Shown piece by piece: positions 947 to 20,105 of a DNA stretch of 64,000 nt. Numbering within the stretch: the first letter of the stretch is position 1; every line of letters begins with the position of its first letter. Where the stretch lies: the NCBI GenBank assembly GCA_964252035.1, contig OZ176201.1; one strand, 5' to 3'. The notes beneath the pieces are model-generated. The model ran no database searches. It was not told the origin of the DNA and saw only the letters and a list, made by a program, of their open reading frames with translations. The translations under genes and the position numbers were made by a program. Origin of the DNA: Podarcis erhardii (lineage: Eukaryota).

Positions 947-1933
947 ACTCAACATGTCAGTTCATGTCATGTACATTACTCCCTCCTTTTTCAAATGATT
1001 CCCCGTCGTAAGATCGCAGCAGAAAATAAAATGACATTGAAGACGTTGATCCATATGACAAAGTAAGTTCAAACAATCACTCCTTTTGTGTTTCCAGGCT
1101 AACTGCTCAAACCTAAACATACAAATAACCCACAGCTACTTTCATGCATGAAAATACAGTAAACGAGTCCAGAGAGCTCCTAAATTTTAGATGTTGTATA
1201 GCATATGAAAATATTATGCACAAAATATTGTTCATGTGAAGAATCACCCAGAAGCACGCTAAGAGTCCACATATGAATCTTTTACTTTGGTTTTACTTCT
1301 CCAAGCTTGCACAGTGATCAACTCCCAAAAAAGAAAAAAGAAGAAAAAGCATGCAAGAGCAAAGTTTCATAGACGAAGCGGCCCTAGGCACTGAAGGAAA
1401 CTAAAGACACAGAGAAATGTTCAAACCATCTTAACCACTGAAGAGGGAGAAACACATCTTTAATTTTTTTTTACAGAGCAGAATGACAAAGGAGATTCAC
1501 CATCTAAAAATGAACAGAGACCACCCTTCCATTTCCTACTGGGACAACTGCCTGCTCTCTCTGTAAGCATTCTCTACTTATTTGCAGTTTAGATTATTCT
1601 TTCCTAACACCACCAGGGCTGGCAGGGAGCAGAAAGTGGGGGTCGGCCACCGACAGAGTATCAAGACAACCATTGTGAGGACTTGAAAACGCAGGGGCAT
1701 CACAGCATGTGGACTTTGGGGAGATAATCAGAAAGGCCAGCTACTGTGAAGAAATAAGCAACTGAGGACTCCTATGCTAAATTTGGAAAAGCAAGTAGGA
1801 TAGGAAGGGGGGGGGAGAGAAGAGGAAGTCTTAGTGACAACGTATTTTACAGGAATTGCAGTGCTGATTCGAGGGCACAGCCCTTACAGTTCCTAGAGGG
1901 TGAGGAAACTGTATGTTCCACTGAGCCACGTTA

Positions 1934-2845
<912 letters not shown>

Positions 2846-3149
2846 TCAGCCCCAGCTCGGCTCGGGCGGGGAGGAGGAGGGGAATTCGGGCGGGCTTGTC
2901 GTCAGCGAGCCGAGGGAGGAGGAGGAGGAGGAGGGGCAGCGGCCCCGGACGCGCAGCAGTGTGGGGCTGGGGTGGAGAGAGGGAAGAGGCGCTGGGGCGC
3001 AACTCCGAGCGGCGTGGAGACGGAGGCGGAGGGAGACGGAGGGCGGCGCGCGCCTCTGCCCCGGACTGGGCGCGAGAAGGCAGCTTGCGAAGGAGCGGGC
3101 TGGGCGCGCAGTGGGGACGAAGCGGCTGCTGCGGGACCGCGCGCGCGGG

Positions 3150-3166
3150 TTTGGCGGGAACGGAAG
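3150..3166. promoter_or_regulatory. Candidate E2F site abutting an ETS site in the GNAI2 promoter
   Basis: TTTGGCGGGAA followed directly by CGGAAG; motif match only. Confidence 0.3.
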
Positions 3167-4539
3167 GAGCCGAAGCAGGGCCGGAGGCTTGTGCGTCAAG
3201 ACGCGCGTTCCGCGTTCTCTGAACGAGAATTGAGAGGAACGCGTGGCAGTATGCGCCGGAGCGGCTGCGAATTCGGGCAGCCTGGAACTGGGGGCTGCTG
3301 TAAAAGTCTGCCAACGGCCTGTTGAAACGGGGGGGGGGGGGGAGTACGCGGAAAGTATATAGAGATGCCACCGAAAGCAGCCTCCCCACATAGTCAGAGT
3401 CATCCCTTCCTGGTTTAAAACAACAAGAACAAGAACATTTATTGTGGGTGCGGATCTGCACCATCAATTTAGTCTTCTCAAGCTGGCACGCATGTGCTGG
3501 TGGTGTTGAGACTCAATTGATGTGGGAACAGAACAGGCAAGGAAGCTGTGCAGTAGGGAAGCCTTGTTGGCTGCACGTGCAGGGTGACTGCAATGTGTGC
3601 TCTGGCTTTTACTGTGTGGCATATGTGTACAGGAGTCCAGTGTGTCAAACCAGGGTGAGATATATATTCACCATGGAAATCTGCATCCCCGGGGTGAGTT
3701 TCCCAACCCACAGCCTTATCATGCGGTGTATTCTGCTAGCTGAGTTGTAACCATCAGGTAGTGAGTTTCGCAGCCTGCAAATGGCACCTCTGGCAGGATC
3801 GGGGGAAATCACATGGTGAGTTGTAATGAACAATTGGTTCAGAAATGGTTGTAGTTCTGCAAGAGGATGGCAATCCCCATGGCAAATATAGCATCTAAAC
3901 ATACTTCTGACAGCCTTCTAGAAATCTAGGGAACTAGGAAGATGGGTAAAAATTCACCACATGGCCATACATCCTAGGCTTCTGTCATGCCATGTTTTCA
4001 TGTGCACTGCATCATGTTTACAAGCAGCAACCATGTGACCACCCAGTGTACAGGCTAGACTGCAGGAACGTAACTTAGGCAAGACTCTCAGCCCAGGCAC
4101 TGCTGTGATCTGTGGAAAAATCTACAAGAGGCAAGAAAGGATAAAGGCTACGGGAGGATGGAAAGATGGTCAAAATAACTTACTGAAACAAACTTCTATA
4201 ATATTAGTGGTCTGGAAATATATAATCAGCTTTGTATATCTCTAACCCCTCTGCTAATAATGCTGTCTCACACAAACTTTTTAATCCATTGGAGATGCCC
4301 TGCTCATATTCTCAGCAGTAAAGGAAGTAAGAACTAATGTGGACAGCAGCAAGGCCTTTTCAGCAGTCGCTCAGCCTAGCCCACTGGGCAAGGTCATTGT
4401 GAGCTCTGAGCTCTTTGAAAGAAGGTTGGGATATACATTTAGTACATAAATATAAAACCTACTCTTTGTTGAGGCATTTATACACAACTTGTCTTTGGTC
4501 TTAGGACAGCAAAGTGAGACATCCCCCCCCCACACACAC

Positions 4540-4750
4540 ACAAATGTTTCACAGCCTTTGAAAGCGTTGGCATAGGTTGCTGTGATTTTATGCTCTGGTT
4601 GTTACTTTGTTTTATGACTGCTGTAATTTTATTATGATTGTGCTTTATTGCCTTCCAGTGACGAATATTACGTTACTTCATTGGTCTTACGTTGTAAGCT
4701 ATCCTGAGCCTAAAGGGATACGATAGGGTATTAAATTTTTAAAGAAAAGC
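4540..4750 (+). mobile_element. Old L2-type LINE 3' tail
   Basis: T-rich 3' UTR ending ttgtaagctatcctgagcc...gatagggtattaaattttt, the usual L2 terminal pattern. Confidence 0.45.
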
Positions 4751-15600: not shown

Positions 15601-16906
15601 AAGATTCCCATCTAGCAAACAATACCAGCAGATGGAATAAGTAACACATTAAAGCAAATATCATAAATCGAAGCCCATAAATCATGTGCAGGAGAGGAGG
15701 TTCCCACAGAGGAGAGGAAAAACAATCTGCCCTAGGTTGCAAAGGACAGTGAAAACACTGTTGAATGTAGACGGTGTTTCTTTGTCACTGGAATAGGTGG
15801 CCTTCTAAAAAACCCAACTTTGGGACGGTTTTTACCAGCATGTTTTTCCTGCTCTGCTAGTCTCAATGAAAACATCTCACGCTGAAGATCATCAGCCCCC
15901 CTTCATGAGGGGCTGAGGCCAGGATACAGGGAGTCCCCGAAAGAAGGCATTGTGGAAAATAGGCTGGAATGTACTAGCTGAAAAGTGCAAGAGAGACCTT
16001 GCAGAGCAGGGCAGATGGGCTTCAGCCTTGCAGGCTCTACCACAGTGGCTCACATGAGCAGGACCGGCCCACACATGAGGCAAACTGAGCCAACTGCCTC
16101 AGGCAGTAGAATCTGCGAGGGTAGCAGCTCCTGATGTGGGATCTTTATGCCCTGCCTTGTTCCCAATGTAGATCTTCATTCACCCCTTCTTCCTTGTTGG
16201 GGGGCATTTTGGGGTTCGCCTCAGTTGCCAAAATGTCTTGGGCTGGGCCTGCACATGAGGCTGGAAATACTCTTAGAAAGAGCAGGATGTCTTTGAGCAC
16301 ACGGTCCACTCATTTTCAGTGTCAGAACCGATCCTAACATACCTGTTATTGGCAGTTATCCAACCTGGCGTAAAAGAGGTTGGGAATGCCAGACAAAATA
16401 CTTGGGGTAAAAGCATAAGAAGTCCATTGGCCTATCAGCTTTCCAGTGTCTTGGGCAGGGGAAGTGACTTGTGACTCTTTCACCAGATTCTGTACCCTCT
16501 CTAACTTTTGGTCCTTCCTGAGCTGCCCAGGGACCTGTGCATGGAAGCAAAGAGCAGGAAATAAAGGATTGTGTTTGTTTGGTCAATGCAAGTTATATGC
16601 TGTTTGTTATATGGCATGATCTCCCCTCTCCTGCTCCTGAGTGATGCTATGGAGTTTCTCCCCAAACCAAAAACCCATAAACTTGGAGTCATGCAGGGGG
16701 AGCAGAGGTGGAAAATCCCCTTTCCAGGGGTCAGCAAACTTTTTCAGCAGGGGGCCTGTCCACTGTCCCTCAGACCTTGGAGAGGGGCTGACTATATTTA
16801 GAAAAATATAAATACCCTGCAAGCCGGTCCCACAGCTGCCTCCAGACCTGGAGGAGGAATGCACTCCGCATGTGCTCAGGAGCGCGCCTTGGTGCCGCCC
16901 ACTCAC

Positions 16907-17234
16907 TGGCATTGTTGACAAGCAGCAGCCATTCCATCGGCCCGTTCCTGCAGAGCTCCCAGGTGGCATGCACCATGCACTGCAGCCCATTGGCTGAGGC
17001 CAGATCAGCAGGCAGGCCATGCACACATAGCGCTGGGCAGGTAGCATGCAGCTTGCCCTCCAGCTGCTCCAGCAAGGCCCTCAAGCATGCCACCAGCAGC
17101 AGCTCTGAGCCAGGCACCAGGCGCGGGGCCAGCAGGCTCACCAAGCTCTGGCTGAAGCCCCGCGACACGCCTGTCACGATGCCCATGGAGCGGCCCAGAC
17201 CACCCACCACCCACCCGCCAGCCTCTCCATCCAT
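16907..17234 (-). pseudogene. SPR: Sepiapterin reductase exon 1 duplicate (109 codons + 1 nt, intact GTGAGT donor), probable pseudogene fragment
   Basis: MDGEAGGWVVGGLGRSMGIVTGVSRGFSQSLVSLLAPRLVPGSELLLVA...LPADLASANGLQ...EWLLLVNNA aligns to recalled human SPR [39 protein letters not shown]...VPADLGAEAGLQ...QRLLLINNA; the donor falls at the SPR exon 1 boundary; exons 2-3 not found. Confidence 0.88.
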
Positions 17235-17384
17235 GGCCACACTCGGTTTACCTCAGCGCAGCCAATCCGAAGCCGTGAAGCATTGCGGAAGTCAGTCCCC
17301 GCGTGGTGAAGCATCCGCGGCTTCTTTTCAAGGAAACGCCACACCGCACCAGTTTAGCTCAGCGGGGACTGACTGAGTGGGTGG
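17235..17384 (-). promoter_or_regulatory. Captured SPR-like proximal promoter / 5' UTR
   Basis: CpG-rich remnant directly upstream of the ATG with CCAAT (17262-17266) and ETS CGGAAGT (17286-17292); strong Kozak GCCATGG. Confidence 0.5.
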
Positions 17385-17820
17385 CAGGGTCCACGGGCTG
17401 GATTTATGAGCCTGGTGGGCCATATCCGGCCCCTGGGCCATAGTTTGCCAAGCCCTGTGCTAGTAGGACGGTTCCTGCTAGCCCAACTATTTAGTTGAAT
17501 CCCGCTCTGTGGCTCATCGTAAAGTATCTGTAAAACTAAATCCAAAATACCATGTAAAATTAAGAACCCTTGAAAGTATGGTGTGCTTTGAAAATATTTC
17601 CGGTTAGTCAATGGAAATCTGAGGCACTGACAGGACTGAATTAACTTGGACCTAGAATACAGGCATTTTCCATTCTAGGTCTATTTTGCTATGAATTAAG
17701 GTGCTTCCCTTGATGTAAGTAGCAGAAGTGTGTGGAATGCTGCACGTACTGGCTTCAGATATTCCTCCGCCTGAACAAAGTTTTCCAAATGGATCTTTGC
17801 TCATAACTATGGTGAGGATT

Positions 17821-17833
17821 AATAATAATAATA

Positions 17834-17864
<31 letters not shown>
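17821..17864. repeat. Compound (AAT)n(GAT)n microsatellite
   Basis: Directly visible. Confidence 0.95.
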
Positions 17865-17865
<1 letters not shown>

Positions 17866-19099
17866 AAATTGGGTAAGTTCAGTCTCTCATAACAGCTAGG
17901 TCTTCGGGTGCTGCACACACACCTCTGCCTGAGCTAAAAAGGCAAGTATAATAAAACCAGTGGGAACAGCATTCATAAAACTCTCCAAATACCCAAGGCA
18001 TATTTACCTTGGAATAAGCATAGCTGACCTCAGTAGAACTTAGTTCAAAGCAAGCTTGTATAGAGAGCGGAGCAGATTTATAAAAATCCAGGTGATAAAT
18101 GCATTAACAAATGGAAGCCAAACTGAGAACTGATGGGAATCATTGACAGCAAATGTTGCGCAATGTGATACAGTACTTTGCTCTGTATAAAGTATGTATG
18201 TGTGTGTGTCTGTCAGCTCAGACCCTGCATGTTTTGATCATGCCCACAGCCAGCCAAGCTTACTGGTATGTGACATTTCCCTGCCTCAAGGCCAAAAACA
18301 TTGCCGCAGCTGGAACAAAATAAAAGGTTGCCACCCTTTTCTTTCTTCCCAACACCTTGTGTTAGCAACAGCCTAATCTGCAGAAATGGAGCCTTAGTGA
18401 CAGGAAAAGCTACAGCCACAAGTCAGCTGTATTGATTGCTGTTAAGCACAGGAGGAACATTGAAATAAATGATCTATGGAATACTACTGTTCACTATTAG
18501 TTCATTCACCTCTTCAGTTTATATCCTTCCATCCACTGAGTTGCACACTATAAAACCATACAATAAAATTTTAAATAGCTAAAACATCAGCTAAGATGCA
18601 GCAAATAGCAATAAAATGACAATATTGCAGCAGCTCAGTGGAGTATTTCCTTTGCTCCATGCAAAAACTTGGGCATTAATATATGTTTTAAGGCAGCACC
18701 AATTAACAAATAATTCTCTGCCTGGTTTTCTTAGTCAATGATGTGGTAAGCTGAAATAATTTTCATGCATTATTAGAAGACTGTTCCATGGGGCTGATTT
18801 GGTTTGCAAAAGGCACCTAACTAGGCAAAAAGCAGTGGCAGATTTGGGAGTCTCAAATTTCAATGGCTTTCCTGTGTGATGCCAAAATTCATTCTCCCGC
18901 CCTGCCCCCCCCACCTCTTATGCTCCGTTCTAAATCACCCATTCCAGTGCCCTGAGAATCCATGCCCAGTGCGACCAAACCAGTCGCTCTCCCCTAAATA
19001 TGCCTCTGCAAACAGCACAATACAGTCGCTCTAAAAAGCAGGGGACATGAAGTGGTGCCAATGTGAAGTGCCTCCCCCAACCCTCAGTGGCACATGGTA

Positions 19100-19814: not shown

Positions 19815-19857
<43 letters not shown>

Positions 19858-19922
19858 TTGTTATTTATACCACTCTGGGCAGCTCCCAATAGAATATTAA
19901 AAACACGATAAAACATCAAACA
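19815..19922 (-). mobile_element. L2 3' tail with (AAT)n microsatellite
   Basis: (AAT)n then ttatttataccactctgggcagctcccaatagaatattaaaaacacgataaaacatcaaacat, the reverse of the L2 end seen at 43300-43385. Confidence 0.8.
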
Positions 19923-19959
19923 TCATCACATAGGGACAACCATCATGGAAAGTCATTTA

Positions 19960-20105
19960 GGCTGCATACATTTAAAGTCAACCCCCCCCCCCCAAGAATC
20001 CTAGGAACTGTAGTTTACAGTTCCCAACACCCATAGCAAACTACAATTCCCAGGATTCTTTGGAGAGGGGACAATATGCTTTAAATGTATGGTGTGGTAA
20101 ACAGC
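19960..20105. mobile_element. Palindromic non-autonomous DNA element (related copy at 35445-35590)
   Basis: catttaaag..caagaatcctaggaactgtagttt / aaactacaattcccaggattctttgg..ctttaaatg inverted arms. Confidence 0.7.

What the first reader, a model, noticed from the sequence alone, without database searches (positions are those of the whole stretch)
16725..17457. Pack-hAT element carrying the 5' end of sepiapterin reductase (SPR)
Seen: a 328-nt SPR-like exon with ATG, upstream promoter motifs and an intact GTGAGT donor sits between two inverted ends (CAGGGGTCAGCAAACT at 16725; AGTTTGCCAAGCCCTG ending at 17457, 13/16 match), each followed by arms resembling one lizard hAT MITE family. Because the intron donor is retained, this is DNA-level capture, not retroposition. 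Known: SPR is not a neighbour of GNAI2/SLC38A3 in mammals, and gene-fragment capture by TIR elements (Pack-TIRs) is uncommon in vertebrates. Inference: a hAT MITE picked up about 575 bp of the SPR CpG island and moved it here, possibly as one of several copies. Caveat: the 8-bp flanks (cccctttc / tgctagta) do not form a TSD.
Basis: partly seen in the sequence, partly recalled or inferred. Interest (0 to 1): 0.9.

Follow-up and report, generated by a model that had tools for sequence, protein, structure and literature searches.

The report
Decayed SPR-carrying hAT transposon copy
This is an old, decaying copy of a small cut-and-paste (hAT-type) transposon that picked up the first exon of the pigment and cofactor gene SPR in lacertid lizards and spread to about ten or more sites, a known but rare kind of event in vertebrates, with no sign that this copy does anything.

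Summary
On the minus strand, 16907-17234 is a 328-nt SPR exon-1 copy with ATG and a GTGAGT donor, between inverted ends at 16725 and 17457.

The Pack-hAT reading holds for the family. Five other copies (four Podarcis lilfordi, one Zootoca vivipara) match this one up to its ends. Four are complete and have their own 8-bp target-site duplications, three perfect and one 7/8. Short SPR-less MITEs carry both arms.

Two corrections:
- Only about 415 bp (16824-17238) comes from SPR: 4-6 nt before the ATG, exon 1, and about 80 nt of intron 1. The SPR promoter was not captured. The 150 bp upstream is a linker of unknown origin.
- This copy has no target-site duplication.

This copy is a relic. It keeps 13 of 70 parental CpGs, its NADP-binding motif is degenerate, there are no SPR exons 2-3 in the window, and one possible RNA run gave no RNA signal. 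Three species 1.4-2% diverged also carry it, so no empty site was found.

A different hAT in the worm lizard Rhineura captured its own SPR exon 1 independently.

The scan found this family twice before on other DNA of this genome (s1-220619, s1-229638). It is a new member of a known kind.

The parts
17389..17457 (-). 5' arm of the non-autonomous hAT element in SPR-sense orientation. It includes the terminal inverted repeat at 17442-17457, which has 2-3 changes from the family consensus CAGGGGTCGGCAAACT.
   Evidence: Aligns over about 69 nt with SPR-less MITEs L001 43603-43922 and L004 28885-29135 and with the other Pack copies. One RNA-run contig breaks off at 17457.
17239..17388 (-). Linker of unknown origin, shared by all Pack copies. 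It holds a 13-nt perfect stem pair (17290-17302 and 17362-17374) and half of a CCAAT-containing palindromic unit. It is not SPR promoter.
   Evidence: No significant match to 4 kb upstream of parental SPR in P. lilfordi (L005) or Zootoca (L009), although those two upstream regions align with each other at 83%. Its depth equals that of the SPR part, not that of the arms. The palindromic unit also occurs outside any Pack copy at L004 13727-13785. The fold is not significant, z -1.18.
16907..17238 (-). Captured SPR piece, first part: 4 nt of 5' leader plus exon 1 (ATG 17234-17232, 328 nt, open frame of 109 codons plus 1 nt).
   Evidence: E 7e-16 to human SPR. 79-80% DNA identity to parental exon 1 in L005 and L009. 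The Rossmann motif reads TGVSRGFS where the parent has TGASRGFG. The whole 16824-17238 block keeps 13 of 70 parental CpGs and 45 have become TG or CA.
16824..16906 (-). Captured SPR piece, second part: the first 83 nt of intron 1, starting with the GTGAGT donor at 16906-16901.
   Evidence: Homologous to parental intron 1 (L005 4326-4398). All copies share a 10-nt indel against the parent.
16725..16823 (-). 3' arm of the hAT element, with an intact terminal inverted repeat at 16725-16740. The innermost 9 nt (16815-16823) are of ambiguous origin.
   Evidence: Aligns with both SPR-less MITEs and all Pack copies. Hundreds of contigs from related species break off at 16723-16725, and summed contig depth over this end runs to hundreds of thousands against 8-15 for single-copy DNA.
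16717..16724 (.). Left flank CCCCTTTC. It is not a duplicate of the right flank and does not look like a hAT target.
   Evidence: The same junction is present in related organism B (X4 record 19, 16167-16775).
17458..17465 (.). Right flank TGCTAGTA. It fits the family's usual target (central CTAG) and is probably the surviving half of the target-site duplication.
   Evidence: The consensus of foreign flanks next to 16725 ends in TCTAGAG. There is no second TGCTAGTA within 16 kb. The junction is bridged in organism B (X4 record 21, 17420-17808).

Best explanation
Window 16725-17457 is one fixed, inactive, decaying copy of a multicopy Pack-TIR of the hAT type found in lacertid lizards.

Shown:
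- A short non-autonomous hAT element (about 69-nt and 99-nt arms, 8-bp target-site duplications) carries a 150-nt linker plus about 415 bp of the SPR gene. The SPR piece runs from 4-6 nt before the ATG, through exon 1, into about 80 nt of intron 1.
- The capture happened once. All six copies share both breakpoints and an intronic indel.
- The composite element then transposed as a unit to different chromosomes, each time with a new target-site duplication.
- Copies are star-like and Podarcis and Zootoca copies interleave. This dates the burst to about or before the split of those genera.

Inferred:
- The capture arose by template switching during gap repair or replication at a MITE. Mobilisation was in trans, by a hAT transposase encoded elsewhere.
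- This copy inserted at a TGCTAGTA target and later lost or changed its left flank, which removed one half of the duplication.
- It is now methylated junk. CpGs have decayed, the coding motifs are degenerate, and it cannot encode an SDR enzyme.
For: - Ends. Other copies stop matching exactly at the ends. L002 covers positions 201-933 of a query in which the element is 201-933. L001, L003, L004 and the Zootoca copy L006 end within a base or two.
- Target-site duplications. L001 GTCTGGGG 8/8, L003 AGCTGGAG 8/8, L002 7/8, L006 TTTTAGCC 8/8. SPR-less MITEs: GCATAAAC 8/8 and CTCTAAAC against CTCTAAAT, 7/8.
- Parental genes. L005 (P. lilfordi) and L009 (Zootoca) have exons 1-3. All six copies begin their homology at parent position 3995-3997 (ATG at 4001) and end at 4396-4398.
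- Tree. The Pack copies form a clade with 87/92 support and terminal branches of 0.12-0.16.
- Divergence. Copy to parent p is 0.15-0.19, copy to copy 0.18-0.24. CpG observed/expected is 0.37 here against 1.08 in the parent.
- Coding state. dN/dS against the parent is 0.5-1.2, and 3 of 5 copies have a broken frame.
- Context. There are no SPR exons 2-3 in the window.
- Copy number. Depth over the SPR part is about 10-15 times single-copy depth in three related species.
- Further copies known only as proteins from P. muralis, P. lilfordi and Zootoca.
- The kind of element is described in Tan et al. 2021, PMC8277862.
Against: - This copy has no target-site duplication (2 of 8 matches), unlike every other complete copy examined.
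- No empty orthologous site was found. The three related species examined (1.4-2% diverged) all carry the insertion.
- No autonomous hAT with these ends was looked for, so the superfamily call rests on the 8-bp duplications, the CAGGG terminus and the target preference.
- Copy number from summed contig depth is rough; the tool itself warns that it is not a copy number.
- The origin of the 150-nt linker is unknown.
Confidence: 0.9

Rival explanations
1. This copy has been co-opted as an alternative first exon or promoter for GNAI2, or for an unannotated transcript. It would be transcribed from the linker and spliced from the retained donor at 16907|16906 into downstream exons.
For: - It has the same orientation as GNAI2, whose exon 1 lies at 2560-2441 on the minus strand, 14.3 kb downstream.
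- Both exons end in phase 1: 328 nt and 118 nt of coding sequence.
- The donor is intact.
- Annotators in other lacertids built spliced models that start in Pack copies: P0003, P0011, and the Zootoca 'eL27-like' model P0078.
- The insertion is retained in four related species.
Against: - No contig of the one possible RNA run (X18) lies on 16974-17355.
- CpG observed/expected of 0.37 argues for long-term germline methylation, not an active CpG-island promoter.
- Between species the interior diverges more (about 3-3.4%) than the flanks (1.4-1.9%), so it is not under constraint.
- Retention over 1.4-2% divergence is expected for neutral DNA.
Confidence: 0.05
2. The window copy did not arrive by transposition. 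It came by a non-transpositional route, such as ectopic recombination or gene conversion between two family members, or an aberrant or one-ended hAT event, which would explain the missing target-site duplication.
For: - There is no target-site duplication here, while four other complete Pack copies and two MITEs have one.
- The MITE family is very abundant, so partners for recombination are common.
- The right flank looks like a hAT target and the left flank does not.
Against: - Both termini are complete to the last base, and homology to paralogues ends exactly there.
- The flanks are single-copy.
- A simple deletion or substitution in one flank after normal insertion explains the same facts.
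Confidence: 0.1
3. It is exon 1 of a real, functional SPR paralogue.
For: The frame is open for 109 codons, with an ATG and a consensus donor.
Against: - There are no exons 2-3 in 64 kb.
- The glycine-rich motif and the following Arg are lost.
- Pfam finds no domain.
- The exon sits inside transposon arms.
- CpGs have decayed.
- The true SPR gene lies elsewhere, with three exons within 2.7 kb.
Confidence: 0.01

Closest known systems
Multicopy Pack-TIRs of animals (Tan et al. 2021, Nat Commun, PMC8277862), for example Pack-hAT-N8_XT of Xenopus tropicalis carrying 291 bp of the CAPSL 5' UTR
   Same: - A non-autonomous hAT carries a few hundred bp of the GC-rich 5' end of a host gene.
- It was amplified to different chromosomes with distinct 8-bp target-site duplications.
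- The parental gene is intact elsewhere.
   Different: - Host lineage: lacertid lizards.
- Cargo: SPR exon 1 plus the start of the intron, and no promoter.
- More copies: 6 with DNA in hand and about 10-15 by depth, against 3 for the frog case. That survey found only 4 multicopy cases among 370.
- The family is old and decayed, whereas that survey targeted young elements.
Pack-MULEs of grasses
   Same: Gene-fragment capture between terminal inverted repeats, a bias towards GC-rich 5' ends of genes, and multicopy amplification (from PMC8277862 and general knowledge).
   Different: A different superfamily (Mutator, 9-10-bp target-site duplications) in plants. Many Pack-MULEs are transcribed and yield small RNAs, which has not been shown here.
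The Rhineura floridana hAT-like element carrying SPR exon 1 (L007 2400-3395)
   Same: It carries SPR exon 1, and the locus has a called 'sepiapterin reductase-like' gene. It has an 8-bp target-site duplication (TATAAAAC, 8/8) and terminal inverted repeats that pair at 14 of 15.
   Different: The ends are unrelated (CAGTGGCGTACC...). The cargo is 81% identical to Rhineura's own SPR and only 63% to Podarcis SPR, so this was an independent capture. Its copy number is unknown.

Membership tests
Pack-TIR (gene fragment carried by a TIR transposon) | Both ends are termini of one TIR transposon family | tested here: met
   Both arms occur together in SPR-less MITEs (L001 43603-43922, L004 28885-29135) and in five other Pack copies.
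Pack-TIR (gene fragment carried by a TIR transposon) | The interior derives from a host gene whose parental copy lies elsewhere | tested here: met
   16824-17238 is 79-80% identical to exon 1 and intron 1 of SPR in L005 and L009, which have all three exons.
Pack-TIR (gene fragment carried by a TIR transposon) | Target-site duplication flanking the composite element | tested here: not met
   Window flanks CCCCTTTC and TGCTAGTA match at 2 of 8. The feature is met in four other copies: L001 8/8, L003 8/8, L006 8/8, L002 7/8.
Pack-TIR (gene fragment carried by a TIR transposon) | Multicopy: the same junctions at several loci with different flanks | tested here: met
   Six loci with DNA share both breakpoints, on at least four P. 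lilfordi chromosomes plus Zootoca and this window. Depth is about 10-15 times single-copy depth.
hAT superfamily | 8-bp target-site duplications | tested here: met
   Six family members have 8-bp duplications, 8/8 or 7/8. This copy does not.
hAT superfamily | Short terminal inverted repeats starting with YARNG | tested here: met
   The termini read CAGGG... The family consensus is about 16 nt. The window ends pair at 13 of 16. The YARNG rule itself is recalled from memory.
hAT superfamily | An autonomous partner encoding a hAT transposase with the same ends | not tested
   No whole-genome search tool for this lizard was available.
Sepiapterin reductase (functional SDR enzyme gene) | Complete coding sequence (exons 1-3) with the TGxxxGxG cofactor motif | tested here: not met
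   Only exon 1 is present. The motif reads TGVSRGFS. Pfam gives no hit.

The most novel reading that the evidence does not exclude
SPR exon 1 is a recurrent capture target for unrelated hAT elements in squamates. Two independent captures are shown here, in Lacertidae and Rhineuridae, and an unresolved exon-1 duplicate exists in the agamid Phrynocephalus. The dispersed sense and antisense exon-1 copies might feed back on SPR, for example through small RNAs or chimeric first exons. SPR is the gene whose regulatory variation sets orange colour morphs in wall lizards (PMC6431182). The recurrence is real. The functional feedback is pure conjecture.
Probability: 0.06. Interest if true: 0.75.

Novelty: new member of a known kind. 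Interest (0 to 1): 0.4.

Why it matters
Gene-fragment capture by cut-and-paste transposons is common in plants. In animals it is mostly single-copy: one survey of 100 genomes found 4 multicopy cases among 370 (PMC8277862).

A lacertid family with about ten or more copies, shared across genera, adds a clear vertebrate example of capture followed by transposition. So does a second, independent capture of the same exon in a worm lizard.

The family also explains a set of spurious 'SPR-like' and 'hypothetical protein' gene models in lacertid annotations. It matters for anyone mapping reads or designing assays at the SPR colour locus.

This particular copy adds little beyond the family. Its one puzzle is the missing target-site duplication.

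Tried and rejected
- Pfam on the 110-aa ORF gave no family. The SPR identity rests on PDB and homologue searches.
- Empty site: three related species (X4, X6, X17; 1.4-2% diverged) all carry the insertion, so none was found. More distant orthologous loci could not be fetched.
- Expression: the only possible RNA run (X18, and 'RNA' is a guess) has no contig on the SPR part. Its contigs on 16725-16883 are about 10% different, so they are other MITE copies. This is absence of evidence only.
- SPR promoter capture: the linkers of five copies were searched against the parental locus L005, and all six full copies against L005 and L009. Nothing beyond chance was found upstream of ATG-6. Rejected.
- A displaced second TGCTAGTA near the left end: none within 16 kb.
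- Structure in the linker: the fold is not better than shuffles, z -1.18.
- A third capture in Phrynocephalus (L008): the exon-1 duplicate is closest to that species' own SPR, but no flanking inverted repeats were found. Left open.
- Protein-level constraint: dN/dS of 0.53 against the parent includes the parent's constrained branch, and 3 of 5 copies have a broken frame. The open frame here is taken as chance in GC-rich DNA.
- The 13/16 inverted repeat alone is not significant.
- SLC38A3 as the other neighbour was not verified.

Full report
**What is there**

On the minus strand of the window, an ATG at 17234 opens a 328-nt exon that ends at 16907. A GTGAGT donor follows at 16906-16901. The 110-codon translation matches human sepiapterin reductase residues 3-103 at E 7e-16. 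It is 65-66% identical to exon 1 of lacertid SPR. Pfam finds nothing, because the fragment is short and degenerate: it reads TGVSRGFS where the parent has TGASRGFG.

The inverted ends at 16725-16740 and 17442-17457 pair at 13 of 16. Alone that is not beyond chance.

**It is a member of a transposed family**

A protein search with the exon found short 'SPR-like' or 'hypothetical' proteins in Zootoca vivipara, Podarcis muralis and P. lilfordi at 62-72% identity. I fetched the DNA of four P. lilfordi loci on four chromosomes (L001-L004) and one Zootoca locus (L006).

Each locus holds the same composite: arm, linker, SPR, arm. Similarity to the window copy stops at or within a base or two of 16725 and 17457. 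L002 aligns over exactly the 733 nt of the element, at 74%.

The complete copies carry their own 8-bp target-site duplications:

| Copy | Duplication | Match |
|---|---|---|
| L001 | GTCTGGGG | 8/8 |
| L003 | AGCTGGAG | 8/8 |
| L006 (Zootoca) | TTTTAGCC | 8/8 |
| L002 | GTGTGGAC / ATGTGGAC | 7/8 |

L004 is truncated at its 3' end.

Two short elements without SPR carry both arms and also have 8-bp duplications: L001 43603-43922 (321 bp) and L004 28885-29135 (251 bp). So the arms are the two ends of one MITE family. The 8-bp duplications, the CAGGG terminus and a target preference ending in TCTAGAG point to hAT. The target preference is the consensus of hundreds of foreign flanks abutting 16725.

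**What was captured**

I fetched the true SPR genes of P. lilfordi (L005) and Zootoca (L009). Each has three exons within about 2.6-2.7 kb.

All six Pack copies begin their SPR homology 4-6 nt before the ATG. All end about 74 nt into intron 1 of the P. lilfordi gene. All share a 10-nt indel against the parent. In window coordinates the SPR piece is 16824-17238, about 415 bp.

The two parental genes align with each other upstream of the ATG at 83%. The Pack copies do not align there. The SPR promoter was therefore not captured.

The 150 nt between the 5' arm and the SPR piece (17239-17388) is a linker of unknown origin. It has the same depth as the SPR part. It contains a CCAAT-bearing palindromic unit that also occurs elsewhere in the genome (L004 13727-13785).

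The retained, homologous intron piece confirms capture at the DNA level.

**One capture, then a burst**

Shared breakpoints in all copies mean a single capture. In a tree of the SPR block, the Pack copies form a clade (87/92 support) with star-like terminal branches of 0.12-0.16. The Zootoca copy sits among the Podarcis copies. The split between the Pack clade and the two parental genes is unresolved.

Copies are nearer to the parent (p 0.15-0.19) than to each other (0.18-0.24). Divergence from a six-copy consensus is 10-12% over all sites. At non-CpG sites it is 4.6% for the window copy and 8-9% for the others.

I infer an amplification about or before the Podarcis-Zootoca split, tens of millions of years ago. 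The absolute date is not computed from a calibrated rate.

**State of this copy**

- Of 70 parental CpG sites it keeps 13, and 45 have become TG or CA. CpG observed/expected is 0.37 against 1.08 in the parent. This is the most decayed of the five copies compared.
- dN/dS against the parent is 0.53. That figure includes the parent's constrained branch. Three of the five copies have frameshifts or stops.
- There are no SPR exons 2-3 anywhere in the window.
- GNAI2 exon 1 lies 14.3 kb downstream on the same strand, at 2560-2441. Both exons end in phase 1, so the idea in note s1-254917 is arithmetically right.
- The one run guessed to be RNA shows no contig on the SPR part. The decayed CpGs also argue against an active promoter.

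**Orthologues and copy number**

Contigs of three related organisms, whose flanks differ by 1.4-2%, were laid on the region.

- In organism B, contigs bridge both junctions (X4 records 19 and 21).
- In all three, contigs 96.6-97.7% identical cover the interior. Known paralogues differ by 18% or more, so these must be orthologues.

The insertion therefore predates these species, and no empty site was found.

Summed depth over the SPR part is about 10-15 times single-copy depth. The arms reach thousands to hundreds of thousands. These are rough figures, not copy numbers.

**The open puzzle**

This copy has complete termini but no target-site duplication. The right flank TGCTAGTA fits the family's usual target. 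The left flank CCCCTTTC does not, and no second TGCTAGTA lies nearby.

I favour ordinary insertion followed by loss or change of the left flank. Recombination between family members, or an aberrant hAT event, cannot be excluded.

**Beyond lacertids**

In the worm lizard Rhineura floridana, a 996-bp element (L007 2400-3395) encloses an SPR exon 1. It has unrelated ends (CAGTGGCGTACC..., pairing at 14 of 15) and a perfect duplication, TATAAAAC. Its exon is 81% identical to Rhineura's own SPR and only 63% to Podarcis SPR. This is an independent capture by a different hAT.

An exon-1 duplicate in Phrynocephalus (L008) is closest to that species' own SPR, but no flanking inverted repeats were found.

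**Comparison with what is known**

Tan et al. 2021 (PMC8277862) found 370 Pack-TIRs in 100 animal genomes. Of these, 208 were on hAT elements and only four were multicopy: three in Xenopus and one in alligator. The multicopy ones favoured GC-rich cargo, and a template-switch-then-transpose model was proposed. The present family fits that kind and has more copies.

I found no paper describing it. The wall-lizard colour-morph paper on SPR does not mention transposons or duplicates.

Within this scan, the same family was already reported twice on other DNA of this genome (s1-220619, s1-229638). Other Pack-hAT families carrying CENPW, RFXAP and GNAL fragments were also noted. I did not test those.

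**Verdict**

It is a new member of a known kind and of moderate interest. This particular copy is a relic.

Noticed in passing
L006 2501-47387 (Zootoca vivipara OY735917.1): The RefSeq model XP_034995904 'eL27-like' (P0078, 220 aa) starts with 81 residues of a Pack-SPR exon. These are spliced to an RPL27-like sequence some 45 kb away. This is either a chimeric transcript or an annotation artefact seeded by the retained SPR donor.
   Followed up: partly
L001 3001-44177; L004 2501-42082; L002 2501-2829; L003 2501-2998 (P. lilfordi): Several 'hypothetical predicted proteins' of the P. lilfordi annotation (CAI5786500, CAI5793558, CAI5789214 and others) are Pack-SPR exons, some spliced over about 40 kb. 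They are likely spurious genes.
   Followed up: partly
L007 2400-3395 (Rhineura floridana CM057606.1): An independent hAT-like element with different ends and a perfect 8-bp duplication (TATAAAAC) carries Rhineura's own SPR exon 1.
   Followed up: yes
L008 2501-2842 (Phrynocephalus forsythii): A further SPR exon-1 duplicate, 79% identical to that species' SPR over 104 residues by tblastn. No inverted repeats were found around it, so its origin is unresolved.
   Followed up: partly
window 17244-17290; L004 13727-13785; L003 2257-2457: A palindromic unit of about 50 nt holding two inverted CCAAT boxes (GGCTTCGGATTGGCTGCAGG... and its complement). It sits in the Pack linker, is duplicated in L003, and also occurs outside any Pack copy. 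It is probably a piece of another repeat.
   Followed up: partly
window 16019-16400: Another dispersed repeat just left of the element. Summed contig depth is 1,500-4,600 against 8-15 for single-copy DNA in three related species.
   Followed up: no
window 19839-20000: A very abundant repeat follows an (AAT)n run, with summed depth of about 120,000-155,000. Many contigs break off at 19923. It is probably a SINE-like element.
   Followed up: no
window 17823-17866: A compound microsatellite (AAT)n(GAT)n about 370 bp from the element. Contigs of the related species are cut there.
   Followed up: no
window 17914-18183: One low-depth contig (depth 3.1, 2 differences) of the run guessed to be RNA lies here, about 460 bp beyond the element's 5' arm. 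This could be faint transcription or DNA carry-over.
   Followed up: no
window 2441-2560 (minus strand): GNAI2 exon 1 (MGCTVS...KLLLLG). The rest of the gene lies beyond the window start.
   Followed up: partly
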